A stretch of DNA of 47,607 bases from Macrostomum lignano (GCA_002269645.1 NIVC01000071.1:1-47607); one strand, 5' to 3'. Shown: positions 1,257 through 33,518, counted from the first letter of the stretch. Made by a program: numbers and translations. Notes: a model not told the origin generated them from the letters alone.

Positions 1257-1726
1257 CTATGGCGAGAAAGCAGAGAGAAATTTGACACTTTTTACTGCAT
1301 CATTTTAATTGAAACTACGGGAAAAAAATCAATAAAGCATTTTTATATTTCTTCTTCTAATAAAAGACATACTGCCAAATCTATGTCCCTTCATAAAATC
1401 ATTTTATGATCCTTATCTACCCTAAGGGCATCTCTGGGCTCTATAGCTCAGGTGTGGCAACTTCAAAATAGCAATATAAGAAGCAGTTTTGCTGCTCATT
1501 AAATCACCTAATCAAAGGAAACCGTAACCGATTAAAAAGCAAAATTGAAAGTAGAGAAATTTGCGCAGAGCACTATGTAAGAACGCGGCTAAAAACGGAA
1601 CGTTGAAAACTCTAGAGAGGCATCAGACAACAATCAAAGCGAATCGGATAAATGATTTTTCTCAAGCAAGAGAGTGGCACAAAGCTACACAACAGCAATC
1701 ACTCTTCTCCGACTACAAATGCATAC

Positions 1727-4700
1727 CACTGCGTCTTCTGACTCCAAGTCTCTTGCGTCGTTGTCGCTGTCAACAAAGCCGCAGCCTTCGCAGCTGGCAA
1801 CAGCGGGCGGCGGCGGGTTGCGGTCGCCGCCGTCATCGGGGATCAAGGGACTGGGCGAGATTTCGGGAGGGTCTCTGCTGCTAACTCGCTCGGTCAAGCT
1901 CGGCATAAGCGAATCGGCGCCCATGCACAGATTTGAGCATTCGACATCAATGCTGAGAGGTTCATCAACGGCGACTGAAGTTCTGGCTGACGAAGGTTCA
2001 TCCAACGGTAGCGCCGGCTGCTGCTCTTTGCTGTCGTTTTTGTCTAGCGAGCCTCGTGTGCCGATCAGATCGGCAGGATCGATGCCGTGAAGAAAGCCGA
2101 GCTGCGCGGCCATGGAGAGCGGATAGGCGGGCCCGTGTGGTACGTGGAGCACTCCAGTGTTTGGATCCACTAGCTGATCGTCAATAGCTTCTTGAAGTGT
2201 AATTCGCCGGCCTATTGGCGACTCCAGCGACAGAGTCACACCGTTTGGATCAATAGCTCCCGTCTCGATTGCTTCCTTGAATGTCAGCGGCTTGCCGCCC
2301 ACAACAACATGCGTGTCTTCACGGCACGGACTGGCAAGGCTGCTGTCGTCGTAGGAGATTCGATCATCTAGCAACGGTGACTTGCATGTTCGGGACTCAA
2401 GCGCTGGCTCTGGATAATCCGATGTGTACACTATGTCCATGGACATTGATCCTAGAGACATCAGCGAAGTGTCGTTGAGCGTTGGAGACGCTTCAGCTTG
2501 CTCAGCGTTTGATCGTCTTTGCTGAGGCAGATTCGCAGACTTCTTCGGCAGTGGAAACGACATCGATAGATCTTCGCTGCGCGGCGTGAAATTGCCAATA
2601 GAGTCGTCTTCTGTATCCTCTTCGACCATTTCGATGGTTTCACTGTCGCTTGGAATGTCGATATTGTCAACAGAAGCTTCGTCTTTTCGTCCGGTTGAAC
2701 AAACAGATCCATGCTGAGGAGATTGCACCGCTGATTCTGGTTGGCCAGTGGTATGGAACTCTTGTTCAGGCGTTATTCGCATCGGCTCGGCCGCCTTGAT
2801 TTCGATTTCTGTCACAGCCATGGGATGCTGAGTTGGCATAGACTGTTTTGTTGTTGCAAACTCCATCTGTTCTACTTGTTCTTCGTTTAGTTCAGCAACT
2901 TCCGATTTAGGTGCGAGTCCTGCTGTCTTTATGTCACTCTCGCATCTGAGGTGAACTGCGAGCACCAGTGTTTCTGAGTTTACCACCCTGATAGCATCCT
3001 TCGCTGCACGCCTAACTTTGCACACGAAATCAGTCCTCTTTAATGTTAAATCGCGTTCGTCCACTGTTTTTTCATCGCTCCCTAATTTATCTTTTGAATG
3101 AAAATCGGATGAAATCGGTTGATTTGCATCGTTTTCAGTTGAAGCCTCAGCTTGGCTATCGATGTGCAGAGACTGCTCAAACTCAACACTTGCACCATCA
3201 AGTTCAGTTTCCACTGGCGATTCAAAGCTTCTCTCCAGCTCGATTGCGGATTCAAGTCCGGATTCAGAAGGGTTCTCATGCAAACCTGTGCCCTTGTAGT
3301 CTGGAACCGAGCAAACTGAATCTCGGGAGTCCTTTCCAGAACTTCTCAGTTTAACTTCCAACACAGCTGTCTCTCGTTCAACCACATGAGGCGTTACGAC
3401 GTCATGCCTATCCCCGGAAGTGGCATCTCGATGGGAAAGGTTAGATCCTCTGCGACCAATGGACTCATTATCTTCCTCGAAAAGTACTTCGAAGTCACTT
3501 TCCGACTGGTTGAATGAAGGCTCGCGACTGTTCTGATGAGGCTGCAGTTGATTTTGCGAATCCGTACTTTTTCCTGAATCATCAAAACTTTCATGCTTAA
3601 TATTGATAGGCTGCATAACTGACGTGACGGACGCATCGCCTGCTGTTGGATCTACCGACATCAAGTCTTTATCACTAGCTGAACTATCTGCATCTGGGTT
3701 TGTGTCATCATCAAGGTGCATTGAAATCTCCAGACTGGTTGTATTTTCTGTTGCTTCTTCGCCGAGGCCTTCTGGTGTCGGTAGGTTGTCACTACGCTGT
3801 CTAACGTTTTCGGCATCAGCTGACTGATCAGGTATTTGCAGCGAAACAGCAAGCACCATTGTCTCAGTGTCCAGCGTAAAAGTACGATTTGCAAGCCCAG
3901 AAGTTTCAAGAACTGGTCTTCGGAACTCCTCAATAAAGCCTGCTTCGCTGGTTTCTGCCTCTTCAAATGGTGGCTCTAAGGAAATGCTGAGGGATTCGAT
4001 GTCACTGAACCTGCTATCGGGCTTTTTCAAGGACTCAAAATCTTCATCAGATGGTACAGTTGCAGTGTCGAGAGATTGTGAATCCTCCCGCTTCGAATCG
4101 AAATCTATTTCCTTTTCAAATTCACCTAAATGCACTTCAGCTTCGGGCTTAACACTTGTCAGATCGTCAGCAGCGATTTCACAAGAGCTTAATTCGTCAG
4201 ACTGACCTTCGACTACTTTGCTGGAGCTTTCGGGGCATTTTAAAAATGCGTTTTCCTCATCGTCTGTCTTATCATTGCGAAGCGTGACAGCCAGCCCATG
4301 ATGTTCGATGTCCATTTTCATATGGACTCGCTTGACATCGGGACTTTCCTCGGAAATTTCCTCTGTCTCTTCCAGTGTCCCAAACGAGTTAAGTCGTTTT
4401 CTTTTCTGCAGACTATCGGATGTCAAAGATCTACCGATTCTGTAGTCTTGGAATTCTTCAGGTTCATCCAGCTCCATCGAGATTGATATAATTTCACTCT
4501 CTGTTGCCTTGGACTCAACCTCAGCACCTCCAGCATTACTCAGCGAACTTTCGTGAAGTAATCGTTGGTTGTCATTCTGGGGCTCATCGAGCTCGAGCGA
4601 AATTGAAATCGTTTCAAATTCTTTTTCCACTGCAGGGAACTCCTGATTATCAGCTGTCGGTTCCTCTCTGCTTGCAAGCTTGACTCCGCTTTCTGGCTGC

Positions 4701-7700
4701 TCGCTGTGGCTTGGTGAGGGATGCAGATTCTTCAACGAATCAACTTTTAAATTCTCGTTACTTGTGCCTAAAATAGGGACCTCAGAATCTTCTTGTTGCA
4801 CGACTGCCATGTCATTCGAGTGAATGTCTTTTCCATTAGACACTCCTTCATTAGGCCGGAGGTCTGGGTAGAACTCGGAATCCGCGGGACTGAAACCTCG
4901 ACACGCAGGTTGGTCAAGGTCAGCTCGAGCTGTCAACTGTTGATTTTCTAGCCTTGATTTTTCGCTGAGAGATTCGCTGTTGGAATCAAGCATATGGTCA
5001 CCAGCAGACTCACTATGGTCCGGTTTTGAAGAGTTAAACTCTTCCTGGCTTGGTTCAGACCCAAAGCTGTTGTCTTTTGAATCGGTCAGTTTATACACCT
5101 TGTCAGGTGCCTGTTGGCTTGATTTGAGAATGACTGTAGCATCGCTAGGACTTGACCCGGAGTCTGAGTCGTAGTCATCATCGTCAGCTTCCTGACGTAG
5201 CTGAGCTGCAAGCACGTGACTCTCCGAGTCAAAACTGCTTTGTACAAGTGGCTCACACTCAGGCTCATTTGCTTCTATATCATCAGTGTCAAACAGACTT
5301 TCCTCTGTTGTTTGAGAAACAGTATTTACGTCTTTTAGTCCTGGTGTGACGTCAGAATGCTTGCTCATTTTCTCCACAGCAGTTTCCGGGAAGTGTTTGG
5401 AGCCTGGCATCTGCTGACGTGAGGGACTGTGTTTCTTGAGACATTCTTCGCTAAGCAGATCAGTCGGCTCACATGATTCCGAAAGATGCTTTGAAGACGA
5501 TCTTTCCGTTTCTGCAGTACTTTCGAAACTTTTCTCAATCCCGATGGTTGGAAAACCAGATGGAGAGTCGCCTCTCTTGGAATCCTCGGTACTGTTGCCA
5601 GCTGATTCTCCTTCATTTGCACCGCTCTCCTTTGGAATCGGCTCAAAATTATTTGACGAAAGATCATTGCGCCGAAGAAACTCTGGAACTGGTACAGCTT
5701 CATTTGGTTCGGTAGAAGCCTGGTCAGGAAAGCCAGACAGAAGATTTTCATCATTCCTGCACAGTCGCACAGCTAGGACATAGGTTTCCGTCTCCGCAAC
5801 ACGCTGAAGAGGCGCTCTGTCTTCTGCTTTGCTGCTAATTTCCTTATCATCCGGGAAAGTAGCATAAAACTGTGAGGCCGTTGTTCGCATTTCGATTGGC
5901 TGATGCTCGTGATTATCTAGAGTTGATTTATGCACGTCTTGCTGGGTGTCTGAAACACTGGTGATATGAGGCGGGCCAATTAGTGATGAATCTTTAGATG
6001 AACTGTGAATAGATGAGCCGTCGTCCATCGCACTCTCAGCAGCTCGCTCACTTTCCTGTACTTTTCCAGATTCCTGGAATGGTTGACGGTTTTGATCAAG
6101 TTCCTCTTCCTGTTCAGCGTCACCGCCCAGCTTCTCTGCAGCGTCTGCGATTTCCGACTCTTCATCCCGGTGTCGATTAGACTGTAAAATTTGGTCGGTC
6201 TTTCCACTGAACTTTTGCGAGTCCGGCTCAACATCTTTGACGTCGGCTGACTGAGTGACACCAGAATCTGCAGCAAAACCAGTCGGCTCATTGGTGTCAC
6301 TCTCCAAGGCATTCTCTGTAGTTTCTTTGCGCTTATCGACATCCTCATTCCGGTTTCTAATTGGTTCAGAGTCTTCCTGCTCACTGAGCTGGCGAATACA
6401 ATCAGAGTGAGAAGATTGCTCTGCCCCTGAACAAAGAACGTCATCGGCTGTGGTCTGTGCCTCCCAAGCCATGCGCTTGAAGTGTTCGGCTGGATTTTTA
6501 ATTACCACTGAAATGAACTCTTCGACTTCTTCAGAATCAGAAACTGAAATTTGCTCGTCGTCATATTCGCGCATTGGTTCACCAGCCTGCAGCTGTACTG
6601 CAAGAACGGCCGTCTCTGTATCAACAACAGTGTGAAAATTTTCAGGCAGATCATTCCTAAATGATTTCGCGCCTCGATCAGTTTCTGCAGCATCTGAAGG
6701 TGTGCGGTATTCCTTTGAATCCTTGCCAGATTGGTTACATTCATCTGTGTCCTGAGAATCAAGCTTTGAAGGAAACTCCTGCAATCCAGCCGGTGATGAT
6801 GCCTGAACGTTCACCCTCTCGGCCTTGCCCTCGTCACCCCAAAAGTCGAGGGTCTTTCCATCGTCACCTGATATTAGCTCATCGTCCAATTTGTCCTTGC
6901 GCTGTTCAAATGCGTCTCTCTCAGATTTGGCACCAATTGACGATTCGGATGCAGATTCATCATCATCAGCGATTGGAGTTTCGCTCACCTCTCTAATCTC
7001 TTTCTTGTTGTCCATTCTGACTTTTTGCTGGATTTCTTCGAGAAAAGATGCCAGCTCTTCTTCGCTGGCTGATGGGCGGGGCGCATTATCTAATAAATTT
7101 TCTGAGTCGGCTGTTTGGTCATTCTCGCCATCATTGGCCGCAAAATTCGGCCTGTCAGGCTTATTCTTCATCAAATCATCTCTGTCTGAGGACTCGCAAG
7201 GCTTTGTGAAGTCCGGGTGTAGAGAAGGCTCGGGTTCAACATCGAGATACTTCTCGGCGGGTTCAGCTTGGTTATGAAGGATTTCTTCCGAATCGTTGGA
7301 ACTGACGGATTGGTCTTCATAGCGCTCTAGCGTGCCGGTCCTGGTGGTGGGCACCAAGTTGTCATCAGATTCATAAGGCTGATCTTTCAGGCTTGCAGAC
7401 TCCGTACGAAGCTGCACGGCGAGAACTTGAAACTCGGAGTGTACAATTTTTTCGACACCTTTAACAGCTTTTATGGTAGGTTTCTCAGTGTCATTCGAGC
7501 TTTGGGATTTGGTTATTCTGCTTGGCTGTGTCTCCGTGGCGCTCTCGTTCTCATCTTTCAATGCGCTCACAAGCTTAATTGAGTCTTTATTTTCACTCAA
7601 ACTCTCAGCAGCTGGAATCGACTTTCGAGTTTGCTGCTCTTGTTTAAGAACAGATTCGCGCCTCTCCGTGTTGGCTAACATCTCTGTTTCGGAAAGAGGT

Positions 7701-8611
7701 CGTTTCAAACGGTACTCCGTGTCGCTAACGCCTTTATCAGGCTCGAACTCCAGACTGTCGGGCAGCTTGCGTTTACCAACCGGCACTGAGCTGACAGCTT
7801 CGGAGGGAAGGAACAGAGACTCTCCAGGTAGAACACTGCCCATTTCTTGATCCAACGGTTGATCCAGCAAGTTGCTTGTATCGCAAGGCTGCTCTTTTAT
7901 CGTAGTCGTAGATGGCAACACTTCATGTTCAGCAGTTTTTGAGTTGAGAATAGACTCTGAGCCATTGATGTCTGCTACTGAACCGGCTGCTGACTCAGGA
8001 CGGCTTGATCTGTCTAAAAACCCGGCATTAGTCGCATCAGCGCCCCTAAGAACAACATGGTCTGAAATCTTTGCTTTAGACAACACAGGATAGCTGACAG
8101 CCGCTGCCAGCTGCACTGGCAACTCCTGAACAACGTGTCTGTTCGCCTGCACTGGCTCAGCATACGACGCACCAGAGGTGCAAGCCTCAACCACCTCATC
8201 TTCGAACTCTACCAGCATGGAAACGTCTAGCTCAATCTGCTGACCGTGAATGACGTCCTCAAAGCAGACGCTCGAAGCGTCTGAACTTACTGAGATGTCC
8301 ACGATTTCGTGGTCATCAGCTTCGGACTGCTGAGAATTGAAATCTGAGTCGTCGTCATGTTTCTTGGGCAGACTGCGCTCGATAGAGACGCGTTCACGAC
8401 CTGACTGAATGGCATCAAAAGCCTTATCCACAGCTTCTTCTAAGCCTTGCTGCTTCTCAAAATCCACGTCCGCGCTCGACAGGCCTGATGGAGAAGCCGA
8501 CTGACCGAGCGAGTTAGGCTTAGTCTGCAAGCCAGAGACTAAATGACTGCCAGCATTCTGGGGCTGAGCATATTGGTTAGAGCTTTGGTTAGGGGTTTGG
8601 AAGCTCGAGGT
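1727..8611 (-). CDS. shot/MACF1/DST-like: Giant exon (2,295 codons): acidic Ser/Glu/Asp-rich low-complexity region ending in a plectin-repeat cluster
   Basis: Lies within ORF 1685-8617. Acceptor tttccttttttgttcggccacccatgcag|ACC, donor GTG|gtatgc, phase 0/0. Plectin-repeat motifs at ~2070-2310 (LTFKEAIETGAIDP, ITLQEAIDDQLVDPNTG, YPLSMAAQLGFL). Confidence 0.85.
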
Positions 8612-9123
8612 CTGCATGGGTGGCCGAACAAAAAAGGAAAAGTGTTAGATTTGTTATGTTTGAGAAAGCAACAATACAAAAATAGTTGCGTAAGTAATAT
8701 TGCAAGGTAAAACTGTAAAAGAAGCATTAGAAAATATTGATCAGCAGCTGCAATGCAATCCCTAAGACGTATTTTCGCTATGGCCAGAAATTTAGCGTAT
8801 GTTCGCGCATTGGTTTTAGACAAAAAAATGACAAAAAATAATTTGCTGGCCAAGCGCTCTTTAGCTACAGCGATCAAAGCTTCGTTATTATTCACACTCC
8901 GTGCGGTCCACTCGATAATCGGATGTGTGACTGAGGTGATCACGAGATCTGGTAGCTGATTTATAGTAAAAATCGCAATCAAAAACTTTAATCAATCAAG
9001 TGGCTGTTAAATTTCAAATATTAGATCCAATTTTGTTTCCTAAGTTATGTCCACTACGTAAGCCAAGCGAAAATCAGCGACACTCTTGCGCAACTTTTTT
9101 TCAAAAAAGACTATTTTACCAAC

Positions 9124-12100
9124 CTGATTTGGAATGCTCACTTGCAGCGCATCTTTGACGGCGAGTTCAGACTGACCCGCGGCACCCAGAGACAGCTCTG
9201 GGATGCTTCCCGCCGCTGGTTTACCACTGGATACCCCCTCAGCCAAGTCCGGGACATTCAGTTCTGCAACAGTCTGTTCTGTTGAATCTGCTGCTTGACC
9301 CGATGTGTCCTGATCGGATGAAAAATCGTTGGCATGCTTTAAGGAAGGCTCACCAGCACTATCTGCAGGTTTCTCTTTATCGATACCGCTAAAGCATGGG
9401 ATTGCTTGTTCCTCGACCAGCTGATGAGATTCCACAGATCGCGTAGGGAAGGCAGGTTGTTCCACCGGATCGTGTACGGCTGTCGATGAAAGCTTTGGAT
9501 CCGCGACGCTTTGATCGTTTCTCTGTTGAACATCCGAATCACCGCTCAATATTGCTGGCTCAGCTCCAACTGAATGCACTGATGGCTGCAGCTCCAAATC
9601 AGACGGCTGCAATTCCGATTGGCCAGACCCAGTTTGTGGGAGATGATCAGAACCTAAGATGACGGTTGGTTCTTCATGCTTTGATTTAGAAAGACTTGGC
9701 TGCTGTACTGATCCAGAAGGATCTACAGTTGACATCGATGCTGATCCAGGAAGGCCTATTAAAGGTTGGTGCTGCTGTTCTGATCCAGCAAGGCCTGTAG
9801 TTGGTTGTCGTTCTGATGCAGCAAGGCCTGTAGTTGGCTGCTGTTCTGATCCAGCGAGGCTGGTAGTAGGCTGCTGCCGTTGCTCAGATCCAGCAAGGCC
9901 TGTTGAAGGCAGTCGTTCTGATCCAACAAGGCCTGTATTTGGCTGCTGTTGCTGTTCTGATCCAGCGACGCCTGTAGCTGGCTGTTCCTCTGATCCAGTG
10001 AAGCCTGTTGAAGGCTGTCGTTCTGATCCAGCGAGGCCTATAGTTGCCTGCTGCTGTTGTTCTGATCCAGCAAGGCCTGTAGTTTGCTGTTGTTCTGATC
10101 CAGCAAGGCTTGTAGTTAGCTGCTGTTCTGATCTAGCGAGGCCTCTAGTTGGCTGTTGCTGTTGTTCTGATCCAGCAAGGTCTGTAGTTGGCTGCTGTCG
10201 TTGATCTAATTCAGCGAGGCCTGCTGAAGGCTGCTGTTGTTCTGATCCAGCGAGGCCTGTAGTTGGCTGCTGTTCTGATCCAGCAAGGCCTGTAGTTGGC
10301 TGTTGTTCTGATCCAGCGAGGACTGTAGTTGGCTGCTGTTCTGATCCAGCGAAGCCTGTAGTTGGTTGTCGTTCTGATGCAGCAAGGCCTGTAGTTGGCT
10401 GTTGTTCTGATCCAGCGAGGACTGTAGTTGGCTGCTGTTCTGATCCAGCGAAGCCTGTAGTTGGCTGCTGTTCTGATCCAGCGAGGCCTGTGGTTGCCTG
10501 CTGCTGTTGTTCTGATCCAGCAAGGCCTGTAGTTGGCTGCTGCCGTTGCTCAGATCCAGCGAGGCCTGTTGAAGGCTGTCGTTCTGATCTAGCGAGGCCT
10601 GTAGTTGGCTGCTGCTGTTGTTCTGATCCAGCAAGGTCTGTAGTTGGCTGCTGTCGTTGATCTAATTCAGCGAGGCCTGCTGAAGGCTGCTGTTGTTCTG
10701 ATCCAGCGACGCCTGTAGTTGGCTGCTGTTCTGATCCAGCAGGGCCTGTAGTTGGCTGCTGCCGTTGCTCAGATCCAGCGAGGAATGTAGATGGCTGTTC
10801 CTCTAGTTCAGCGAGGCCTGTAGATGCCTGCTGCTGTTGTTCTGATCCAGCGACGCCTGTAGTTGGCTGCTGCTGTTGTTGTGATCCAGCGAGGCCTGTA
10901 GTTTGCTGCTGCTGCTGTTCTGATCCAGCAAGACCTGTAGTTGGCTGCTGTTCTGATCCAGCAAGGCCTGTAGTTGGCTGCTGTTCTGATACAGCGACGC
11001 CTGTAATTGGCTGCTGTTCTAATCCAGCAAGGCCAGTAGTTTGCTGTTGTTCTGATCCAGCAAGGCCTGTAGTTGGCTGCTGCCGTTGCTCAGATCCAGC
11101 GAGGCCTGTAGTTGGCTGCTGATCTGATCCAGCGACGCCTGTAGCTGGCTGTTCCTCTGATCCAGCGAGGCCTGTAGATGGCTGTTCCTCTAATTCAGCG
11201 AGGCCTGTAGATGACTGCTGCTGTTTTTCTGATCCAGCGACGCCTGTAGTTGGCTGCTGCTGTTGTTGTGATCCAGCGAGGCCTGTAGTTGGCTGCTGTT
11301 CTGATCCAGCAAGGCCTGTAGTTGGCTGCTGTTCTGATCCAGCGACGCCTGTAGTTGGCTGCTGTTCTAATCCAGAAAGGCCTGTAGTTGGCTGCTGCTG
11401 TTGTTCTGATCCAGCGAGGACTGTAGTTGGCTGTTGTTCTGATCCAGCAACGCCTGTAGTTGGCTGCTGTACTGATCCAGCAAGGTCTGTAGTTAGCTGC
11501 TGATCTGATCCAGCGACGCCTGTAGCTGGCTGTTCCTCTGATCCAGCGAGGCCTGTAGATGGCTGTTGTTCTGATCCAGCAAGACCTGTAGTTGGCTGCT
11601 GTTCTGATCCAGCGACGCCTGTAGTTGGCTGCTGCTGTTCTGATCCAGCAAGGCCTGTAGTTGGCTGCTGCTGCTGTTCTGATCCAAAAAGGCCTGTAGT
11701 TAGCTGCTGATCTGATCCAGCGACGCCTGTAGCTGGCTGTTCCTCTGATCCAGCTAGGCCTGTAGTTGGCTGTTGTTCTGATTCAGCGAGACCTGTAGTT
11801 GGCTGCTGCTGTTGTTCTGATCCAGCAAGGCCTGTAGTTTGCCGCTGCTGCTGTTCTGATCCAGCAAGACCTGTAGTTGGCTGCTGTTCTGATCCAGCAA
11901 GGCCTGTAGTTGGCTGCTGTTCTGATCCAGCGACGCCTGTAGTTGGCTGCTGTTCTAATCCAGAAAAGCCTGTAGTTGGCTGTTGTTCTGATCCAGCGAG
12001 GCCTGTAGTTGGCTGCTGCTGTTGTTCTGATCCAGCTAGGCCAGTAGTTGGCTGCTGCTGTTGTTGTGATCCAGCGAGGCCTGTAGTTCGCTGCTGTTCT

Positions 12101-15100
12101 GATCCAGCAAGGCCTGTAGATGGCTGCTGTTCTGATCCAGCAAGGCCTGTAGTTGGCTGCTGCTGCTGTTCTGATCCAGCAAGACCTGTAGTTGGCTGCT
12201 GTTCTGATCCAGCAAGGCCTGTAGTTGGCTGCTGTTCTGATCCAGCGACGCCTGTAGTTGGCTGCCGTTCTAATCCAGAAAGGCCTGTAGTTGGCTGCTG
12301 TTGTTGTTCTGATCCAGCGAGGACTGTAGTTGGCTGTTGTTCTGATCCAGCAACGCTTGTAGTTGGCTGCTGTACTGATCCAGCAAGGTCTGTAGTTAGC
12401 TGCTGTTCTGATCCAGCGACGCCTGTAGTTGGCTGCTGTTCTGATCCAGAAAGGCCTGTAGTTGGCTGCTGCTGTTGTTCTGATCCAGCGAGGACTGTAG
12501 TTGGCTGTTGTTCTGATCCAGCAACGCCTGTAGTTGGCTGCTGTACTGATCCAGCAAGGTCTGTAGTTAGCTGCTGATCTGATCCAGCGACGCCTGTAGC
12601 TGGCTGTTCCTCTGATCCAGCGAGGCCTGTAGATGGCTGTTGTTCTGATCCAGCAAGGCCTGTACTTGGCTGCTGCTGTTGTTCTGATCCAGCAAGACCT
12701 GTAGTTGGCTGCTGTTCTGATCCAGCGACGCCTGTAGTTGGCTGCTGCTGTTCTGATCCAGCAAGGCCTGTAGTTGGCTGCTGCTGCTGTTCTGATCCAG
12801 AAAGGCCTGTAGTTAGCTGCTGTTCTGATCCAGCGAAGCCTGTAGTTGGCTGCTGTTCTAATCCAGAAAAGCCTGTAGTTGGCTGTTGTTCTGATCCAGC
12901 GACGCCTGTAGTTGGCTGCTGCTGTTCTGATCCAGCAAGGCCTGTAGTTGGCTGCTGCTGCTGTTCTGATCCAGAAAGGCCTGTAGTTGGCTGCTGTTCT
13001 AATCCAGAAAAGCCTGTAGATGGCTGTTGTTGTGATCCAGCGAGGCCTGTAGTTCGCTGCTGTTCTGATCCAGCAAGGCCTGTAGATGGCTGCTGTTCTG
13101 ATCCAGCAAGGCCTGTAATTGGCTGCTGCTGTTGTTCTGATCCAACGAGGCCTGTAGTTGGCTGCTGCTGTTGTTCTGATCCAGCAAGGCCTGTAGTTGG
13201 CTGCTGCTGCTGTTCTGATCCAGCAAGACCTGTAGTTGGCTGCTGTTCTGATCCAGCAAGGCCTGTAGTTGGCTGCTGTTCTGATCCAGCGACGCCTGTA
13301 GTTGGCTGCTTTTCTGATCCAGAAAGGCCTGTAGTTGGCTGCTGCTGTTGTTCTGATCCAGCGAGGACTGTAGTTGGCTGTTGTTTTGATCCAGCAAGAC
13401 CTGTAGTTGGCTGCTGTTCTGATCCAGCAAGGCCTGTAGTTGGCTGCTGTTCTGATCCAGCGACGCCTGTAGTTGGCTGCTTTTCTGATCCAGCAAGGCC
13501 TGTAGTTGGCTGCTGTTCTGATCCAGCGACGCCTGTAGTTGGCTGCTTTTCTGATCCAGCAAGGCCTGTAGTTGGCTGCTGCTGTTGTTCTGATCCAGCA
13601 AGGCCTGTGGTTTGCTGCTGCTGTTTTTCTGATCCAGCTAGGCCTGTAGTTGGCTGCTGCTGTTGTTGTGATCCAGCGAGGCCTGTAGTTGGCTGCTGTT
13701 CTGATCCAGCAAGGCCTGTACTTGGCTGCTGTTCTGATCCAGCAAGGCCTGTAATTGGCTGCTGCTGTTGTTCTGATCCAACGAGGCCTGTAGTTGGCTG
13801 CTGCTGTTGTTCTGATCCAGCAAGGCCTGTAGTTTGCTGCTGCTGCTGTTCTGATCCAGCAAGACCTGTAATTGGCTGCTGTTCTGATCCAGCAAGGCCT
13901 GTAGTTGGCTGCTGTTCTGATCCAGCGACGCCTGTAGTTGGCTGTTGCTGTTTTTCTGATCCAGCGAGGACTGTAGTTGGCTGCTGTTCTGATCCAGCGA
14001 CGCCTGTAGTTGGCTGTTGCTGTTTTTCTGATCCAGCAAGACCTGTAATTGGCTGCTGTTCTAATCCAGCAAGGCCTGTAGTTGGCTGCTGCTGTTCCTC
14101 TGATCCAGCGAGGCCTGTAGATGGCTGTTGTTCTGATCCAGCAAGACCTGTAGTTGGCTGCTGTTCTGATCCAGCGACGCCTGTAGCTGGCTGTTCCTCT
14201 GATCCAGCTAGGCCTGTAGATGGCTGTTGTTCTGAGCCAGCAAGGCCTGTAGTTTGCTGTTGTTCTGATTCAGCGAGACCTGTAGTTGGCTGCTGCTGTT
14301 GTTCTGATCCAGCGAGGCTTGTAGTTGGCTGCTGCTGTTGTTCTGATCCAGCAAGGCCTGTAGTTTGCTGCTTCTGCTGTTCTGATCCAGTAAGACCTGT
14401 AATTGGCTGCTGTTCTGATCCAGCAAGGCCTGTAGTTGGCTGTTTTTCTAATTCAGCGAGGTCTTTAGTTGGCTTTTGCTCTGATCCAGCAAGGCCTGTA
14501 GTTTGCTGCTTCTGCTGTTCTGATCCAGCAAGACCTGTAATTGGCTGCTTTTCTAATCCAGCAAGGCCTGTAGTTGGCTGATGTTCTGATCCAGCAAGGC
14601 CTGTAGTTGGCTTCTTTTCTGATCCAGCAAGACCTGTAGTTGGCTTTTGCTCTGATCCAGCGACGCCTGTAGTTGGCTGTTGCTGTGATCCAGCGAGGCC
14701 TGTAGTTGGCTGCTGCTGTTGTTCTGATCCAGCGAGGCCTGTAGATGGCTGTTGCTCAGATCCAGTGAGACTTCTATTTGGCTGTTGTTCTGATCCAACG
14801 AGGCCTGTAGTTGGCATTTGCTGTGATCCAGCGTGGCCTGTAGTTGGCTGTTGCTCTGATCCAGCGGGGCCTGTAGTTGGCTGCTGTTCTGATCCAGCAA
14901 GGCCTGTATTTGGCTGCTGTTCTGATCCAACGAGGCCTGTAGTTGGCTGTTGCTGTAATCCAGCGTGGCCTGTAGTTGGCTGTTGCTCTGATCCAGCGAG
15001 GCCTGTAGTTGGCTGCTGTTCTGATCCAGCGACACCAGTAGTTGGCTGTTGTTCTGATCCAGCGACGTCTGTAGCTGGCTGTTGTTCTGATCCAGCGGGG

Positions 15101-18100
15101 CCTGTAGTTGGCTGCTGCTGTTGTTCTGATCCAGCAAGGCCTGTAGTTGGCTGTTGCTCTGATCCAGCAAGGTCTGTAGTTGGCTTCTGCTGCTGTGCTG
15201 ATCTAGCAAGACCTGTAATTGGCTGCTGTTCTGATCCAGCAAGGCCTGTAGTTGGCTGCTGTTCTGATCCAGCAAGGCCTGTACTTGGCTGCTGTTCTGA
15301 TCCAGCAAGGCCTGTAGTTGGCTGCTGTTCTGATCCAGTGACGCCTGTAGTTGGCTGTTGCTGTTGCTCTGATCCAGCGAGGTTTGTAGTTGGCTGCTTT
15401 TCTGATCCAGCATAGCCTGTAATTGGCTGCTGTTCTGATCCAGCAAGGCCTGTAGTTGGCTGCTTTTCTGATCCAGCAAGACCTGTAGTTGGCTTATGCT
15501 CTGATCCAGCGACGCCTGTAGTTGGCTGTTGCTGTGATCCAGCGAGGCCTGTAGTTGGCTGCTGCTGTTGTTCTGATCCAGCGAGGCCTGTAGATGGCTG
15601 TTGCTCAGATCCAGTGAGACTTCTATTTGGCTGTTGTTCTGATCCAACAAGGCCTGTAGTTGGCTGTTGCTGTGATATAGCGTGGCCTGTAGTTGGCTGT
15701 TGCTCTGATCCAGCAAGGCCTGCAGTTGGCTGTCGTTTTGATCCAGCGAGGCCAGTAGTTTGCTGTTCCTCTGATCCAGCGAGGCCTGTAGTTGGCTGTT
15801 GCTCAGATTCAGTAAGGCCTGTAGTTGGCTGCTTCTCTGATCTAGCGTGGCCTGTAGTTGGTTGTTTTTCTAATCCAGCGAGGCCTGTAGTTGGCTGTTG
15901 TTCTGATTTAGCGATGCCTGTAGCTGGCTGTTGCTCTGATCCAGTGAGACTTCTAGTTGGCTGCTGTTCTGATCCAACGAGGCCTGTAGTTGGCTGCTGT
16001 TCTGATCCAGCGAGACCTGTAGTTGGCTGTTGCTCTGATCCAGCAAGGTCTGTAGTTGGCTGTTGTTCTAATCCAGCGAGGCCTGTAGTTAGCTGCTGTT
16101 CTGATCCAGCGATGCCTGTAGCTGGCTGTTGCTCTGATCCAGCGAGGCCAGTAGTTGGCTGTTGCTCAGATCCAGTGAGGCCTGTTGAAGGCTGTCGTTC
16201 TGATCCAGCGTGGCCTGTAGTCGATAATTGTTCTGATTCACTGAGGCCTGTCAAAGGTTGCTGGTGCCGTTCTGTACCATTGAAGTCTGTAGTTGGCAGG
16301 CCAACAAGGCCCGTCTGACCTTTTGGTGATGCAGATTCTGATGCTGAAAGTTGATCTATAGAAGTGCTGTCTGATGCAGGCAGCTGACATTTAGCAGTTG
16401 CGTTGAGGGCAGCATCTGCTTTCGGTTGCTTGTCCGTTCTTAAAGCAGGTGGTTCTACTAACTGCTCAACTTTTTCTTTTGGACTAAATGAGGCAGGTAC
16501 CTGATCAACTGCGGTGAGTCGCCTATCATTCGATTGTTGACTAGCAGGTCTTTCATGGGAATTAGTATCGGAATTAACTTCATTGCCAGCAAGGGTTTTA
16601 GAGATGGACTCTTTCTCTGTTTGGACTTTTGGGATCTGGTAGTGGAAATCTCCTGAGAGCTGCTCTGTCAATCCTTGACCTGTAGGCTTCTCTTCGAATG
16701 AGTAATTCGCTTCTCTTGCAATAGTGGGCGTCTGACTGACTGGCGCGAGTTTCAATTGAGTAGGTTCATTCTGCCTGTGCTTCGGGTCCACTTGAGCTTG
16801 GCTTAATGCGTCTCCGCTGTAGTCACTGCCGGGGTGCAAAAGTTCCCGCCCTGGCTGCTGTAGTGAAGGCTTTTCCGCGACGCCTGGCTGACTCACGTCT
16901 CCCTTGGCACCCTTAATCTCTTGCGCGCTGTCAATTTCTGGAGCCGAAACTTTTGCTACCTTGGCCTGGGGAGGCGTCGGAATAGTTTGCTCAGGTTGAC
17001 TCAACTCAGAAGCAGCTGCCGTTGCGCCGCTGCTTCCCGGCAACCTTGGAAAATGATTTGCAAGCCGATTTTGCCCGCTTTCACTGCCGGGGGTTTGAGC
17101 ACGTTTCTTTGCTTGGCTAACAATCGCTGGATTACGCGTGTCCGCTAATCCGTTCAATTGATCGGCGGTCTCCTGCCAGTTGGTTTCCTCGTCGATATTA
17201 TCTTCGCAATCGAATTGCGACTCGGTGCACCTGCACCGTTGCAGTTCGTGCAGCTGGTCCATGGTGATCAGGCCCAGTTGAACTGCTTCTGCCAAACTGA
17301 TTGGCCGTCCGTTTGCCGGGTTCACCAGACAACGCCTTCGAGGGTCGTAGGACGCTGCCAGCTCGCGAAAGCTGGGTAGCAGACGTTTCAGCAGAGCCTC
17401 GGCCTCCTCCTGGCTAATGAGGCCCCGACGAACAGCTTGACTTAGAGACAGTCGAGCTCCAGACGCAGAGTCTTCAATTCCAGCGTAGCAATGCCACAGA
17501 CCGAGCGGCCCCGTCTCGAGCTTTACCACCTCGGCCAGCGAGTCAGCAACTTGCTGAGTTACCAGACCGTCCAAGACTGTAACGAAATCCACACCCGAAG
17601 CCAGCCGCAATACTAGTCGAACAGATCGGAGAGCGCTGGAAAATTCCAAGCTGGGCACCCGATGCTGATGACCCTCGCTAAGCAAGTCCCCGTTGTGCAA
17701 GTGGACGAGTTTTTCGCGGAGAGCGGTCTCAAGTGGAGTCGAACGACCCGATTCTTCGACAACAGTGGACTCGACCAGATGAAAGATGCCTCTCTGCAGA
17801 CAGTCGCCAAAGCAAAGCGGCTCGCCGCTGACTGTGTCGAAAAAGAGCAGAACGGGCTGAAAGTCGGGGCCCAGGCCGGCTCGGTAGGTCTCTGAGCCAA
17901 ACAACAGCGGGTCGGAGCCTCCGAGGGGCTCCGGGCGACGGCTAAAGTTAAACATGGTCACCCCGCCGTCCTGGCCCAGGCGGGCAGTCAGGCAGTTGGG
18001 AAGGCCGCTGGGGGTGCCCTGGGGCCCAGCGGACGGGTCTTGCTTAACGGGGTCAGTCTGAAACAGGCCCGTCTGTGTTGGCAGCGACGGCTGCGCTTTC

Positions 18101-18168
18101 AAGTCAAAGCCGCCGCCGCCGCCGCCACCGCCGCCGCTGCTGCGGCTGCTGACGCTGTTATCGGGAAC
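9124..18168 (-). CDS. shot/MACF1/DST-like: Giant exon (3,015 codons): plectin repeats, then a ~6.5 kb 11-aa tandem repeat
   Basis: Acceptor aacccag|GTT at 18169/18168 is in frame with ORF 9040-18102. Donor CAG|gttggt, phase 0/0. Plectin repeats at ~17250-17850 (AGIEDSASGARLSLSQAVRRGLIS, LVNPANGRPISLAEAVQLGLI). Confidence 0.88.
9740..16290 (-). repeat. Coding minisatellite, 33-bp core unit with 36/39-bp Gln-extended variants, encoding (P)TTGLAGSEQQ(QQ), about 190 copies
   Basis: Directly visible as + strand tgttctgatccagcaaggcctgtagttggctgc repeats. Copy number estimated from length divided by mean unit. Confidence 0.97.
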
Positions 18169-18878: not shown

Positions 18879-21519
18879 CTGATTGTCGATAGATCTCGCC
18901 AGCTGCCGCTCGTGCGGTGCCGAGATGATGCGGATCCTAGCGGCCTCTTCAAGCGGCGCTGAGCAGCCTGTGTTGGTGTCGAGCACCGCTCCAGTCACCG
19001 GGTTCACCAGTTCGCGATTCAGCGCCGTTGCCAGCGACACGGACTCGCCAGCGCTGAGGTCCCGCACCAGCACTAGATCCGGGTGCAAAATAGCTGACTC
19101 CACAGTTTGAGGAAATGTCGCGTTTCGACCGTCTCCATCGCTGAACTGCAGTCTCTCGGGTCCCAGTTGTCTTGGACCAGCCGGCGCAAGTAGAGGCAGC
19201 CGGCATAGGGTGCACTGAGGACTCGGAGAGTACCGTTGGCGAGACACTCGGTCAAACGGTCTTCGTCGAGTTCATTGCGGTTAAGAATTCCCAGCTCGAA
19301 TGCCTGTTCCAGACTAATTTCGGTAGGAGCCTGTTCGCCTTCGCTCTTTATCGCCAATTTCGTGCCTTGATGGCTGAGAAAATCCTCACGTATCGCTCGA
19401 GCCAAGCTGACGGGTTCCAGGGTGTCTGGCCGGTAGCAGCAGAGCAGCTCTGGATTGTAGGCGCCTTCCATGGCCAGTTGCAGCGCCGTTGGGCGCTTTG
19501 AAGACGACCACTGGGGTTGCAGGCGACCGGCCGCTTGGTTGGGCAGGCTGGTGTCGTATCCGTGGTGGAAATCGGCCTCCTTTTCATTGTCACCGGAGCT
19601 ACTTGGATAAGTTTGGCGATTAAAGTCTCCGGTCTGTGTAGGGTCCATTTGCTGAGTAGGCACTGCTGATCGAGAAGGATCAACTTGCTGAGTAGACATT
19701 CCTGGTTGAGCAGGATCAACTTGCTGAGTAGACATTCCTGGTTGAGCAGGATCCACTTGCTGAGTAGACATTCCTGGTTGAGCAGGATCAACTTGCTGAG
19801 TAGACATTCCTGGTTGAGCAGGATCCACTTGCTGAGTAGACATTCCTGGTTGAGAAGGATCAACTTGCTGAGTAGACATTCCTGGTTGAGCAGGATCCAC
19901 TTGCTGAGTAGACATTCCTGATTGAGAAGGATCCACTTGCTGAGTAGACATTCCTGGTTGAGCAGGATCAACTTGCTGAGTAGACATTCCTGATTGAGAA
20001 GGATCCACTTGCTGAGTAGACATTCCTGATTGAGCAGGATCAACTTGCTGAGTAGACATTCCTGGTTGAGCAGGATCAACTTGCTGAGTAGACATTCCTG
20101 ATTGAGAAGGATCCACTTGCTGAGTAGACATTCCTGGTTGAGCAGGATCAACTTGCTGAGTAGACATTCCTGATTGAGCAGGATCCACTTGCTGAGTAGA
20201 CATTCCTGATTGAGCAGGATCCACTTGCTGAGTAGACATTCCTGGTTGAGAAGGATCAACTTGCTGAGTAGACATTCCTGGTTGAGCAGGATCAACTTGC
20301 TGAGTAGACATTCCTGATTGAGAAGGATCCACTTGCTGAGTAGACATTCCTGATTGAGCAGGATCAACTTGCTGAGTAGACATTCCTGGTTGAGCAGGAT
20401 CAACTTGCTGAGTAGACATTCCTGATTGAGAAGGATCCACTTGCTGAGTAGACATTCCTGGTTGAGCAGGATCAACTTGCTGAGTAGACATTCCTGATTG
20501 AGCAGGATCCACTTGCTGAGTAGACATTCCTGATTGAGCAGGATCCACTTGCTGAGTAGACATTCCTGGTTGAGAAGGATCAACTTGCTGAGTAGACATT
20601 CCTGGTTGAGCAGGATCCACTTGCTGAGTAGGCACTGCTGATCGAGAAGGATCAACTTGCTGAGTAGACATTCCTGGTTGAGCAGGATCCACTTGCTGAG
20701 TAGACATTCCTGATTGAGAAGGATCCACTTGCTGAGTAGACATTCCTGATTGAGAAGGATCCACTTGCTGAGTAGACATTCCTGGTTGAGCAGGATCAAC
20801 TTGCTGAGTAGACATTCCTGATTGAGCAGGATCAACTTGCTGAGTAGACATTCCTGATTGAGAAGGATCCACTTGCTGAGTAGACATTCCTGGTTGAGCA
20901 GGATCCACTTGCTGAGTAGACATTCCTGATTGAGCAGGATCCACTTGCTGAGTAGACATTCCTGATTGAGAAGGATCCACTTGATAAACCAAATCTCCAG
21001 CACGAGTCCGATGAACTTGGCTAGCAAAGTTCTCTTGTTTATCAGGATCGCCAAGGTGACTAGAATTGGCAGGATGCGAGAAATCATTTTGATGATTTGC
21101 CGGTCGGCTAACATCCTCCTGGCTGCTGCTCATTGCCAATTCGTCGGCCAGCGCATGCAAAGCGTCGATTTGCTCTTCCTCGTCCATTGGCACATCCTCG
21201 CCCTGCTGTTCGTACCGGTTTCCCAGTCGCCTGTCGCCAAACTTGTTCTGCGGCGCCGATCCGGTTGGCTGCATGAAGGCGTCGGCGCCTGCTCGGGCCA
21301 TCCGTACTGAGCTGATCGGCTGATCTTGTTGCGCCTGCTGCGCCTGACGCTGCAGCAGCTCATCATCGGTATCTCCTGGTTGAATCGCCTCAGGCAAAGA
21401 AGCAGGCATATGACCGAGCTGCTCGGGGCGGGCAGGGGGACAGAATCGGGCTGAGGAAAACCATCACCGAAAGTCTGCGAGGAGGATGACTGCTGCGAGG
21501 AAGCAGCCGGGTTCGAAGC
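18879..21519 (-). CDS. shot/MACF1/DST-like: Large exon: 12-aa tandem repeat plus plectin repeats, with 1-2 apparent single-base deletions
   Basis: Acceptor ggtttcag|GCT at 21520/21519 (alternative phase-0 acceptor at 21419/21418), donor CAG|gtaggg. ORFs 19073-21409 and 18867-19247 join by a -1 shift at 19158-19160 (WD-P-ERLQFS). Plectin repeats include EISLEQAFELGIL and ESVSLATALNRELVNPVTG. Confidence 0.8.
19640..20990 (-). repeat. Coding minisatellite, 36-bp unit encoding QQVDP(A/S)Q(P/S)GMST, about 37 copies
   Basis: Directly visible: + strand acttgctgagtagacattcctg(g/a)ttgag(c/a)aggatc(a/c). Confidence 0.97.
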
Positions 21520-22085
21520 CTGAAACCGTTGGGTGCGAAGAGAGAAGTGAGGAGATATGAACACTAAACAGGGTATTGGCAGCGGATGAAAAAAGCCCAG
21601 GAAACACCGGACATGCGTAAAACTTTACAAAGTGTAAATATGAACCAGCGACCACGAGTAAAGCCAATATCCCAATAAGAAGACTACTGAATATGCGACG
21701 AAAGAAAACAGTTGCCAAAACCTGAGCTTTTGCGACAACTTACTCTGACTCTGCTGAACTGCTGATTGTTGAAACTTCTCGCCAATGACTTATAAGAGTG
21801 TAATACCTGACACTAAGGTAAATTAACTAACCGAAAGTTTCCTAGAGTGAAACTTATTGCATTTATAGTGGCTACGAAGGATGTTATGCTTTTAACTACT
21901 GGCAGTATTCTGTACATTAGCGGCAAATGCTACAGTTAGACAAACACACTCAGATTATGAAAAGCAAACGAAAAGCTTCTGATCTCAGGAAAATAGTCCT
22001 AATTCAATGGTCAGCCCGTCTCCGGCCACAGAAACGGCTGCAACCAGAGAACCAGGCTGCAACCAGCCGAGACTGCGCGCCATAC

Positions 22086-25000: not shown

Positions 25001-25177
25001 GCGCATGTAGGCGTCGAACTGGCCGGCGCAATGGTCCAGCAGGGCGAGCCGCTGCTCCGCAACGTCGCTGAGTCGGCGCCATCTCTCTGCGGCGGGTCGG
25101 GTCAGCTTGCTCAGCTGAGCAGCGGCCTCGGCTTGCTCCAGATCCGACTTGGCCGATTCTAGAAGCTGCTGAACGTT
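22086..25177 (-). CDS. shot/MACF1/DST-like: Large exon: last plakin-domain spectrin repeat, linker and two plectin-repeat clusters, with one apparent -1 frameshift at ~23465
   Basis: Acceptor ccgtag|AAC, donor CAG|gtatgg. ORFs 23426-25006 and 22011-23429 join as ...VRLIE-AIASGWLDP.... Motifs include FTIAEALNRGLID, VSVFEALERGLIDP and ISLETAEKMGIL. Length 3092 equals 3n-1. Confidence 0.87.
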
Positions 25178-31157: not shown

Positions 31158-31505
<348 letters not shown>

Positions 31506-33392: not shown

Positions 33393-33518
33393 GACCAAGC
33401 ACAATTTAGCTCAAAAAATCATTTTTTTCTAGGTGTCTTTATAACGTATTCTATCAAATTGAACGAAAATTCGGGTAAAGTCTTACGTATTGGGTGAATG
33501 AAACGAGCAAGCACTTAC

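What the first reader, a model, noticed from the sequence alone, without database searches (positions are those of the whole stretch)
2948..7441. Eight dispersed copies of a short motif, [DE]-[TS]-E-T-x-V-L-A-V-x-L, in a ~2,100-aa acidic low-complexity region
Seen (minus strand): HSEFQVLAVQL (7409-7441), DTETAVLAVQL (6590-6622), ETETYVLAVRL (5762-5794), DSESHVLAAQL (5198-5230), DIEHHGLAVTL (4280-4312), DTETMVLAVSL (3839-3871), ERETAVLEVKL (3347-3379), NSETLVLAVHL (2948-2980). The DNA codons have diverged and the 130-300 aa spacers are largely dissimilar, yet the peptide persists, which suggests protein-level selection. I do not recognise it as a known plakin or spectraplakin motif. Inference: a multivalent, beta-strand-type docking motif (acidic lead-in plus hydrophobic strand) on a disordered tether, i.e. 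an undescribed interaction module inside a cytolinker.
Basis: partly seen in the sequence, partly recalled or inferred. Interest (0 to 1): 0.78.

Follow-up and report, generated by a model that had tools for sequence, protein, structure and literature searches.

The report
Repeated peptide motif in flatworm spectraplakin
A 14-residue peptide recurs eight times in a long, acidic, probably disordered exon of a giant cytoskeletal linker gene of the flatworm Macrostomum lignano; it is real and kept by selection on the protein, but no other protein searched carries it and what it binds is unknown.

Summary
All eight peptides are at the stated minus-strand coordinates, in one 6,885-nt exon (1727-8611) of a Macrostomum lignano spectraplakin gene. 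A loose pattern covering all eight copies occurs 8 times against 0.0025 expected in composition-matched shuffles. An unbiased scan ranks this word as the most recurrent in the exon.

The motif is 14 residues: phi-phi-[DEN]-[ST]-E-T-x-V-L-A-V-x-L-[RQ], with E3, L7 and L11 invariant. Copies are 71% identical at codon positions 1 and 2 but only 29% at position 3. No DNA repeats exist in the exon, so the constraint acts on the protein.

In the only available relative, a 97.4%-identical second gene copy, dN/dS is 0.18 in the motifs and 0.55 in the spacers. The counts are small.

A profile search of 1.84 billion proteins found no other carrier. The two weak hits are unrelated tandem-repeat proteins. 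The motif is unrelated to the gene's plakin repeats, and no recalled motif class (SUMO-interacting motif (SIM), PDZ ligand, LC8, FHA, LIR, nuclear export signal (NES)) fits all eight copies.

The likeliest reading is a lineage-specific short linear motif array: hydrophobic docking sites on an acidic tether. The partner and bound conformation are unresolved. It is of moderate, specialist interest.

The parts
1727..8611 (-). Single 6,885-nt, phase 0-0 exon (2,295 codons) encoding the acidic, probably disordered region. It ends with two plakin-repeat-like modules (…LTFKEAIETGAIDPNG…ITLQEAIDDQLVDPNTG…).
   Evidence: Open frame with no stop. Canonical acceptor (polypyrimidine tract + cag|A at 8612/8611) and donor (GTG|gtatgc at 1727/1726). 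Used as one exon in the gene model of the second copy, P0002. All indels against the second copy are in frame; dN/dS 0.56.
7406..7447 (-). Motif copy 1: IVHSEFQVLAVQLR
   Evidence: profile score 33.4 bits (training member)
6587..6628 (-). Motif copy 2: VVDTETAVLAVQLQ (strict consensus)
5759..5800 (-). Motif copy 3: VAETETYVLAVRLC (strict consensus)
5195..5236 (-). Motif copy 4: SFDSESHVLAAQLR. In the second gene copy it has a 1-aa deletion (DS-SHVLAAQL).
4277..4318 (-). Motif copy 5: KMDIEHHGLAVTLR (most divergent copy)
3836..3877 (-). Motif copy 6: TLDTETMVLAVSLQ (strict consensus). M to V at the variable position in the second gene copy.
3344..3385 (-). Motif copy 7: VVERETAVLEVKLR
2945..2986 (-). 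Motif copy 8: VVNSETLVLAVHLR. V to I at position 0 in the second gene copy.
4583..4609 (-). Second recurrent peptide ('motif B'), copy 1: ISISLELDE (context ETISISLELDEP)
   Evidence: Best-scoring internal 12-mer pair in the ORF: 49, against 36-40 as the maximum in shuffles. Pattern 4 observed vs 0.044 expected. Coordinates.
4463..4489 (-). Motif B, copy 2: ISISMELDE
3965..3991 (-). Motif B, copy 3: LSISLEPPF
3707..3733 (-). Motif B, copy 4: LEISMHLDD

Best explanation
The window is part of a spectraplakin gene of the flatworm Macrostomum lignano, on the minus strand. The gene encodes CH domains, a plakin domain, plakin repeats and a spectrin rod. One 6.9-kb exon encodes about 2,000 residues of acidic, probably disordered sequence between plakin-repeat modules.

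Scattered through that exon are eight copies of a 14-residue motif, phi-phi-[DEN]-[ST]-E-T-x-V-L-A-V-x-L-[RQ]. These copies are among the strongest hydrophobic islands in the region. They descend from very old internal duplications or were acquired repeatedly. Everything between them has drifted beyond recognition, while the motif residues have been held by purifying selection on the protein.

Shown: the motif, its non-randomness, the protein-level constraint, the gene context, and its absence from other proteins searched.

Inferred: the copies act as a multivalent array of short linear docking sites ('stickers') on a polyacidic spacer. Each folds on binding into a groove of a partner protein, so that several partner molecules, or one multivalent partner, are held along the tether by avidity. 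A strand-like bound form is slightly favoured by the alternating pattern, but a short helix is not excluded. A second, interleaved amphipathic peptide (phi-S-phi-S-phi-E-phi-D/E/P, four copies) may belong to the same unit. The partner is unknown.
For: Gene identity:
- Pfam finds CH, Spectrin and Plectin on minus-strand ORFs.
- The contig is NIVC01000071.1 of GCA_002269645.1, M. lignano.
- The N-terminal 1,279 aa of the second copy hit plectin, dystonin and MACF1 at E down to 1e-152.
- The exon is joined to plakin-repeat and spectrin exons in model P0002.

Non-randomness:
- 8 copies against 0.0025 expected.
- The motif is the top recurrent word in an unbiased scan.

Protein-level selection:
- Codon-position identity among copies is 0.71, 0.71 and 0.29.
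- There are no DNA repeats in the exon.
- Against the second copy, dN/dS is 0.18 in the motifs and 0.55 in the spacers; the plakin-repeat part of the same exon gives 0.17.
- By codon counts, the 11-mers hold 1 nonsynonymous and 4 synonymous changes, against 94 and 41 elsewhere (Fisher p = 0.037).
- In the 14-mers the two amino-acid changes sit at variable positions (M to V at x5 in copy 6, V to I at position 0 in copy 8).

Disorder and sticker character:
- Mean hydropathy is 0.402, below the charge-hydropathy boundary of 0.458, with net charge -0.125 per residue.
- Four of the five strongest 7-residue hydrophobic peaks between residues 100 and 2000 are motif copies. All eight are in the top 22.
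- AF2 on 1,010 aa gives pLDDT 33 and no secondary structure.
- Hydrophobic moments are higher at strand periodicity than at helix periodicity in all copies.

Other points:
- Redundancy typical of multivalent arrays: copy 4 carries a deletion in the second gene copy while the other seven are intact and in the same order.
- Not a decayed plakin repeat: hhalign probability 0.4%.
Against: - No partner, no binding data and no expression data. Inclusion of the exon in mRNA rests on a gene model and splice signals only.
- No orthologue of the exon was found, so long-term conservation between species is untested.
- The two-copy comparison rests on six substitutions inside the motifs. Its p-value rises to 0.08 if the deletion in copy 4 is counted as a change.
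- AF2 shows no confidence bump at the motifs in the long segment. For the isolated 42-mer it predicts a helix, not a strand.
- No known linear-motif class fits all copies, so there is no lead to a partner family.
Confidence: 0.5

Rival explanations
1. Homotypic stickers. The motifs, perhaps with the interleaved phi-S-phi-S-phi-E-phi peptides, bind each other within or between spectraplakin molecules through short cross-strand or helix-helix contacts. This would set the compaction, elasticity or clustering of the acidic tether rather than recruit a foreign partner.
For: Two different amphipathic, strand-patterned peptides alternate in the C-terminal half of the exon. The motifs are the main hydrophobic islands in a strongly charged chain. 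Both faces of the putative strand are conserved.
Against: AF2 on the 1,010-aa segment predicts no contacts or structure at all. This is a weak test, because only a single sequence was supplied. Motif B is absent from the N-terminal half, where four motif copies lie.
Confidence: 0.2
2. Remnant of a folded repeat. Each copy is the conserved core element of an ancient 150-300-aa tandem unit that still forms a small structural element, such as a hairpin with motif B, embedded in long loops. On this reading it is not a linear docking motif.
For: - Weak unit-level echoes downstream of some copies: Y[ED]D..[VI]S..DSEE after copies 1 and 2, and [IL]E[KR]SFES..ETE after copies 3 and 7.
- The same gene builds tandem arrays elsewhere.
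Against: Spacer lengths vary from 122 to 295 aa and have no detectable similarity. There is no Pfam or PDB match, no relation to plakin repeats, and AF2 finds no fold.
Confidence: 0.12
3. Member of a known linear-motif class. Candidates are a SUMO-interacting motif (hydrophobic core V-L-x-V with an acidic or phosphorylatable flank), an internal class-I PDZ ligand (E-T-x-V), an FHA phosphothreonine site (T-x-x-L) or an LC8-type T-Q-T-like strand.
For: The core psi-psi-x-psi is present in 6 of 8 copies, E-[ST]-x-[VIL] in 6 of 8, and T-x-x-[ILV] in 5 of 8.
Against: - None fits all eight copies.
- The full ELM expressions for SIMs, written from memory, match 1 and 0 of 8 copies.
- No copy has TQT.
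- The PDZ-like core is internal, without a free C-terminus.
- The invariant residues L7 and L11 are not explained by any of these classes.
Confidence: 0.12
4. No function: a chance recurrence, a neutral relic of duplication, a DNA/RNA-level signal such as a splicing enhancer, or a non-coding ORF.
For: The exon as a whole evolves fast (dN/dS 0.56) and has no homologues outside this species.
Against: - Chance expectation is 0.0025 copies.
- Third codon positions are randomised while positions 1 and 2 are kept, which excludes both a nucleotide-level signal and a young neutral relic.
- A 2,310-codon open frame with in-frame indels only, against the second copy, argues for translation.
Confidence: 0.04

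Closest known systems
Giant plakin-repeat exon of spectraplakins (Drosophila Shot; also MACF1b/dystonin plakin-repeat isoforms) - Roeper & Brown 2003, PMC2173965
   Same: Same gene family and same position in the gene: very large exon(s) between the plakin domain and the spectrin rod, carrying plakin repeats.
   Different: Here the plakin-repeat modules are few and separated by huge non-plakin inserts: two young tandem arrays and this about 2,000-aa acidic region with its own motif. The motif is unrelated to plakin repeats. I recall no acidic region or VLAV-type motif described for Shot or MACF1 (own knowledge), and no paper in the library holds the peptide in a relevant context.
Multivalent short-linear-motif arrays in disordered tethers, e.g. 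LC8-binding TQT arrays in ASCIZ/Nup159, SIM arrays in RNF4, SxIP motifs in spectraplakin C-tails (own knowledge)
   Same: Short conserved peptides, repeated several times. They are separated by fast-evolving disordered spacers of variable length and are more conserved than their flanks. Individual copies are dispensable.
   Different: The sequence matches none of these classes. At 14 residues it is long for a linear motif. No partner is known. It is seen in one species only.
SUMO-interacting motif
   Same: Hydrophobic four-residue core V-L-x-V next to acidic or Ser/Thr residues in 6 of 8 copies.
   Different: The full consensus expressions are not met. The conserved L11 and R/Q12 and the invariant E3-L7-L11 pattern are not SIM features.
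Class-I PDZ ligand (E-[ST]-x-V)
   Same: E-T-x-V or E-S-x-V is present in 6 of 8 copies.
   Different: It is internal, not at a free C-terminus, and conservation continues for six more residues.

Membership tests
Spectraplakin (gene level) | N-terminal calponin-homology actin-binding domain | tested here: met
   PF00307 is found in ORF 28098-29690(-), at E 2.8e-4. That is below Pfam's cut-off because the ORF holds only part of the domain. PF00307 is precomputed on the second-copy gene. Homologues are plectin, dystonin and MACF1 at E down to 1e-152.
Spectraplakin (gene level) | Plakin domain built of spectrin-like repeats | tested here: met
   PF00435 and PF21020 hit the same ORF, both just below their cut-offs. 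The homologues carry PF17902, PF21019 and PF21020.
Spectraplakin (gene level) | Plakin (plectin) repeats | tested here: met
   PF00681 scores above its gathering cut-off in three minus-strand ORFs: 31.9, 25.4 and 36.0 bits against 20.5.
Spectraplakin (gene level) | Spectrin-repeat rod, EF hands and GAR domain at the C-terminus | tested here: inconclusive
   The sequence just downstream of the exon gives PF00435 at E 6.4e-6, 27 bits, below the 29.9 cut-off. EF hands and GAR would lie beyond the window and beyond model P0002, so they were not seen.
Short linear motif in a disordered region (generic) | Short peptide, more conserved than its flanks, in a disordered context | tested here: met
   Column information is 2.8-3.8 bits at seven positions, against about 1-2 bits in the flanks. 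dN/dS is 0.18 in the motifs and 0.55 in the spacers. The disordered side of the charge-hydropathy plot and pLDDT 33 fit disorder. Disorder is predicted, not measured.
Short linear motif in a disordered region (generic) | Binds a defined partner domain | not testable with these tools
   No multimer prediction or interaction data are available.
SUMO-interacting motif | Hydrophobic core plus acidic flank, as in the ELM expressions (written from memory) | tested here: not met
   The core psi-psi-x-psi is in 6 of 8 copies. The full parallel and antiparallel expressions match 1 and 0 of 8.
Class-I PDZ ligand | [ST]-x-phi at a free C-terminus | tested here: not met
   E-[ST]-x-[VIL] is in 6 of 8 copies, but all are internal.
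LC8 (DYNLL) binding motif | TQT anchor | tested here: not met
   TQT is in 0 of 8 copies. T-E-T is in 3 of 8.
Plakin repeat (degenerate remnant) | Profile similarity to the gene's own plakin-repeat modules | tested here: not met
   hhalign of the motif profile against 12 plakin-repeat modules: probability 0.4%, 2 aligned columns.

The most novel reading that the evidence does not exclude
The motif, possibly with the interleaved phi-S-phi-S-phi-E-phi peptide, is a previously undescribed class of linear docking module. It has evolved within macrostomid flatworms. It turns the giant exon of a spectraplakin into a multivalent scaffold for a specific partner, for example a junctional or intermediate-filament-associated protein.
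Probability: 0.4. Interest if true: 0.5.

Novelty: new variant of a known kind. Interest (0 to 1): 0.35.

Why it matters
Spectraplakins are studied mainly through their folded domains. What the giant central exons do is poorly understood even in Drosophila.

This case shows a spectraplakin whose central region has been largely replaced by disordered sequence, and in which selection has kept only a small repeated peptide. If that peptide recruits a partner, it gives a compact, mutable handle on the function of the giant isoform. M. lignano allows RNAi and transgenesis (own knowledge), so this could be tested. It would also add a new entry to the catalogue of linear motifs.

The reach is limited. 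The motif is seen in one species, in two near-identical gene copies. No partner is known, and nothing here touches a long-standing open question.

Tried and rejected
- Homologues of the exon. The whole ORF against 5.8 billion proteins returned only itself. The 42-residue motif alignment found only 3 word-sharing candidates and none scored, not even the query's own protein. That search was therefore insensitive and uninformative (some searches were parameter errors).
- JGI metagenome contigs: no relative (one search was a frame error).
- Profile of the motif against 1.84 billion representative proteins: only two other hits. P0004 is a tandem-repeat protein in a bacterial phage-tail-like locus. 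P0005 is a translated repeat with no name. Both were rejected as weak matches multiplied by repetition.
- Orthologue route through the conserved N-terminus. All hits are N-terminal fragments or distant animals, and none reaches the central exons.
- The more distant M. lignano spectraplakin paralogue (P0010, locus L004): no motif copy in six frames.
- PDB sequence search with the profile: nothing at E <= 10.
- Pfam on the ORF: only a sub-threshold FAM163 match, which I take to be compositional.
- Degenerate plakin repeat: rejected.
- DNA-level repeat or signal: rejected.
- Known linear-motif expressions: none fits.
- AF2 on the 1,010-aa segment gave no usable model, so no fold search was run.
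- A first version of the unbiased recurrence test used too low a score threshold and did not discriminate. It was repeated at higher thresholds.
- Literature: no paper on flatworm spectraplakins or on the peptide.


Full report
**What the window is.** The window is contig NIVC01000071.1 of assembly GCA_002269645.1. A member of the same protein cluster is named by UniRef as a Macrostomum lignano CH-domain protein, and papers cite this accession as the M. lignano genome.

On the minus strand lies a very large gene. Pfam finds a CH domain and spectrin repeats in ORF 28098-29690. It finds Plectin repeats above the gathering cut-off in ORFs 23426-25006, 22011-23429 and 9040-18102. A second copy of the gene sits on contig NIVC01000513.1 (protein P0002, 5,543 aa; locus L002). 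Its full model runs CH, plakin domain, plakin repeats, acidic region, spectrin repeats. The N-terminal 1,279 aa of that copy hit plectin, dystonin and MACF1 from many animals at E down to 1e-152.

**The exon.** The finding lies in ORF 1685-8617(-), 2,310 aa. A polypyrimidine tract and cag|A acceptor at 8612/8611 and a GTG|gtatgc donor at 1727/1726 delimit one exon of 6,885 nt, phase 0 to 0. The P0002 model uses it as a single exon.

Residues 100-2000 are 22% D+E, 9.5% K+R and 19% S+T, with net charge -0.125 per residue. Mean normalised hydropathy is 0.402, below the charge-hydropathy boundary of 0.458. AF2 on residues 901-1910 from a single sequence gave mean pLDDT 33 and no secondary structure. 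This fits disorder but does not prove it. The last ~200 residues of the exon carry two plakin-repeat-like modules.

**Checking the observation.** All eight peptides translate exactly as quoted at the quoted coordinates. Spacers are 122-295 aa. Enrichment against 2,000 residue shuffles of the ORF is:

| Pattern | Observed | Expected |
|---|---|---|
| E..[VG]L[AE][VA].L (covers all eight) | 8 | 0.0025 |
| VLAV.L | 5 | 0.0045 |
| [ST]E[TS].VLA[VA].L | 5 | 0 |

These patterns are post hoc, so I also ran an all-against-all 11-mer scan. The most recurrent word in the ORF is DTETAVLAVQL, with five partners scoring at least 30. Forty shuffles gave at most three, usually one or two. A first attempt at a lower threshold did not discriminate.

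A profile built from the copies finds no ninth copy in any of the six frames of the window. Column statistics extend the motif to 14 residues: phi-phi-[DEN]-[ST]-E-T-x-V-L-A-V-x-L-[RQ]. E3, L7 and L11 are invariant. V6, A8, V9 and R/Q12 are each kept in 7 of 8 copies.

**Level of selection.** Among the eight copies, mean pairwise identity is 0.71 and 0.71 at codon positions 1 and 2 and 0.29 at position 3. It is also 0.29 at third positions of codons that encode the same residue. The exon has no tandem or dispersed DNA repeats beyond two chance 22-23-nt pairs. So synonymous sites are saturated while the peptide is kept. This excludes a nucleotide-level signal and a young neutral relic, and it means selection on the protein.

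The second gene copy is 97.4% identical in DNA over the exon. It carries all eight copies in the same order, and all its indels are in frame. Nei-Gojobori dN/dS values are:

| Region | dN/dS |
|---|---|
| Whole exon | 0.56 |
| Spacers | 0.55 |
| The 14-mers | 0.18 |
| Plakin-repeat part of the same exon | 0.17 |

Inside the 11-mers there is 1 nonsynonymous and 4 synonymous codon change, against 94 and 41 elsewhere (Fisher p = 0.037). In the 14-mers the two amino-acid changes are M to V at the variable x5 position and V to I at position 0. Copy 4, already a weak copy, has lost one residue in the second gene copy. If that deletion is counted as a change, p rises to 0.08.

**Distribution.** The whole ORF finds only itself among 5.8 billion proteins. 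A 30-column profile of the motif was scored against every one of 1.84 billion representative proteins and found three proteins at E <= 0.001: the query's own protein and two others.
- P0004 is a 62-aa tandem-repeat protein encoded between phage-tail-type genes on a 2.7-Mb bacterial metagenome contig.
- P0005 is a translated repeat with no name.

I reject both as weak matches multiplied by repetition. This search could detect proteins with about two or more good copies. It could not detect single copies.

No relative was found in metagenome contigs. The more distant M. lignano spectraplakin paralogue has no copy in 40 kb of six-frame translation. A word-indexed search with the motif alignment was too insensitive to count. 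True orthologues of the exon, from other Macrostomum species, were not in reach. All hits obtained through the conserved N-terminus are N-terminal fragments or distant animals.

**What it is not.**
- It is not a decayed plakin repeat. hhalign of the motif profile against twelve plakin-repeat modules of the same gene gives probability 0.4%.
- It has no PDB relative at E <= 10 and no Pfam match.
- No recalled linear-motif class fits all eight copies. The SIM core psi-psi-x-psi occurs in 6 of 8 copies, but the full ELM expressions (from memory) match 1 and 0 of 8. E-[ST]-x-[VIL] occurs in 6 of 8 but is internal. TQT occurs in none. T..[ILV] occurs in 5 of 8. The LIR pattern occurs in 1 of 8. The partial NES pattern phi-xx-phi-x-phi occurs in 6 of 8, but the full expression occurs in none.
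- The literature library holds nothing on flatworm spectraplakins or on the peptide.

**Anatomy bearing on mechanism.** Four of the five strongest 7-residue hydrophobic peaks between residues 100 and 2000 are motif copies, and all eight are within the top 22. The 12 residues upstream carry net charge -3 to +3, and it is 0 or positive in 5 of 8 copies. The 20 residues downstream are net negative in 7 of 8.

Hydrophobic moments are higher at strand periodicity (0.26-0.53) than at helix periodicity (0.10-0.33) in every copy. On a strand, L7, V9 and L11 would form one face with E3, and T4, V6 and A8 the other. Against this, AF2 on a 42-mer, with the eight copies as its alignment, predicts a helix over residues 9-27 at pLDDT about 79. 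The invariant residues are also spaced i, i+4, i+8. AF2 is known to favour helices for short peptides (own knowledge). The bound conformation is therefore open.

A second peptide, phi-S-phi-S-phi-E-phi-[DEP][DEP], occurs four times at ORF residues 1337, 1377, 1543 and 1629. That is 4 against 0.044 expected, with a post hoc pattern. Its best pair is the top-scoring internal match of the whole ORF, 49 against a shuffled maximum of 36-40. It is interleaved with motif copies 4-7. Weaker echoes follow copies 1 and 2 (Y[ED]D..[VI]S..DSEE) and copies 3 and 7 ([IL]E[KR]SFES..ETE). These hint that the region began as a tandem array of longer units. The same gene carries two young tandem arrays in neighbouring coding sequence.

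**Interpretation.** The shown facts are a real, non-random, protein-constrained, lineage-restricted 14-residue motif, present eight times in a probably disordered acidic exon of a spectraplakin.

The best inference is a multivalent array of linear docking sites: hydrophobic stickers on a polyacidic spacer that bind a partner by folding on contact (confidence about 0.5). The rivals are:
- self-association of the stickers (0.2);
- a cryptic small fold built with motif B (0.12);
- membership of a known motif class such as SIM, PDZ, FHA or LC8 (0.12, partly overlapping the main reading);
- no function (0.04).

**Novelty and interest.** The gene is a new member of a known family. A giant central exon is known from Shot (PMC2173965). 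Motif arrays in disordered tethers are a known kind of thing. This particular motif matched nothing in any collection searched. I rate it a new variant of a known kind. Interest is moderate and specialist (0.35), because it rests on one species, has no partner, and opens no long-standing question.

Noticed in passing
window 9040-18102 (-), array 9771-16251: A 3,020-aa open frame starts with a Pfam Plectin repeat. About 2,100 aa of it are a 33-nt x 187 tandem array encoding the 11-aa unit GLAGSEQQPTT. It lies inside what the second copy's gene model treats as a 14.6-kb intron. It is probably an unannotated or alternative giant exon of the same spectraplakin.
   Followed up: partly
window 19640-20983 (-): A 36-nt x 37 tandem array (93% matches) encodes the 12-aa unit QQVDPAQSGMST. 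It is included in the P0002 gene model between plakin-repeat modules and is a young coding array.
   Followed up: partly
window 4583-4609, 4463-4489, 3965-3991, 3707-3733 (-): A second recurrent amphipathic peptide, phi-S-phi-S-phi-E-phi-[DEP][DEP] (ISISLELDE, ISISMELDE, LSISLEPPF, LEISMHLDD), is interleaved with motif copies 4-7. It occurs 4 times against 0.044 expected with a post hoc pattern.
   Followed up: partly
ORF residues 433/685 and 1027/1794 (window about 7283-7318, 6527-6562, 5501-5536, 3200-3235, minus strand): Two further similar peptide pairs were found: YEDQSVSSNDSE/YDDEQISVSDSE after motif copies 1 and 2, and IEKSFESTAETE/LERSFESPVETE after copies 3 and 7. They may be traces of an ancient longer repeat unit.
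   Followed up: no
window 27235-27625, 31158-31503, 32348-33394, 34551-35043, 36156-38158, 38796-39137, 45656-46048, 46627-47500: The introns and upstream region are dense with minisatellites. These include 23-nt arrays of up to 87 copies, (AG)175, a perfect 15-nt x 33 array, and 28-nt arrays that also occur upstream of the second gene copy.
   Followed up: no
window versus L002 (NIVC01000513.1): The gene exists in two copies, 97.4% identical in DNA over the acidic exon. Synonymous divergence is about 0.035. This fits either alleles or the recent genome duplication reported for M. lignano.
   Followed up: partly
L003 3001-4545: The best non-self hit of the motif profile is a 514-aa protein made of 62-aa tandem repeats. 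It sits among phage-tail-type genes (sheath upstream, DNA_circ_N downstream) on a 2.7-Mb bacterial metagenome contig. Its position suggests a tape-measure-like protein. It is unrelated to the finding.
   Followed up: partly
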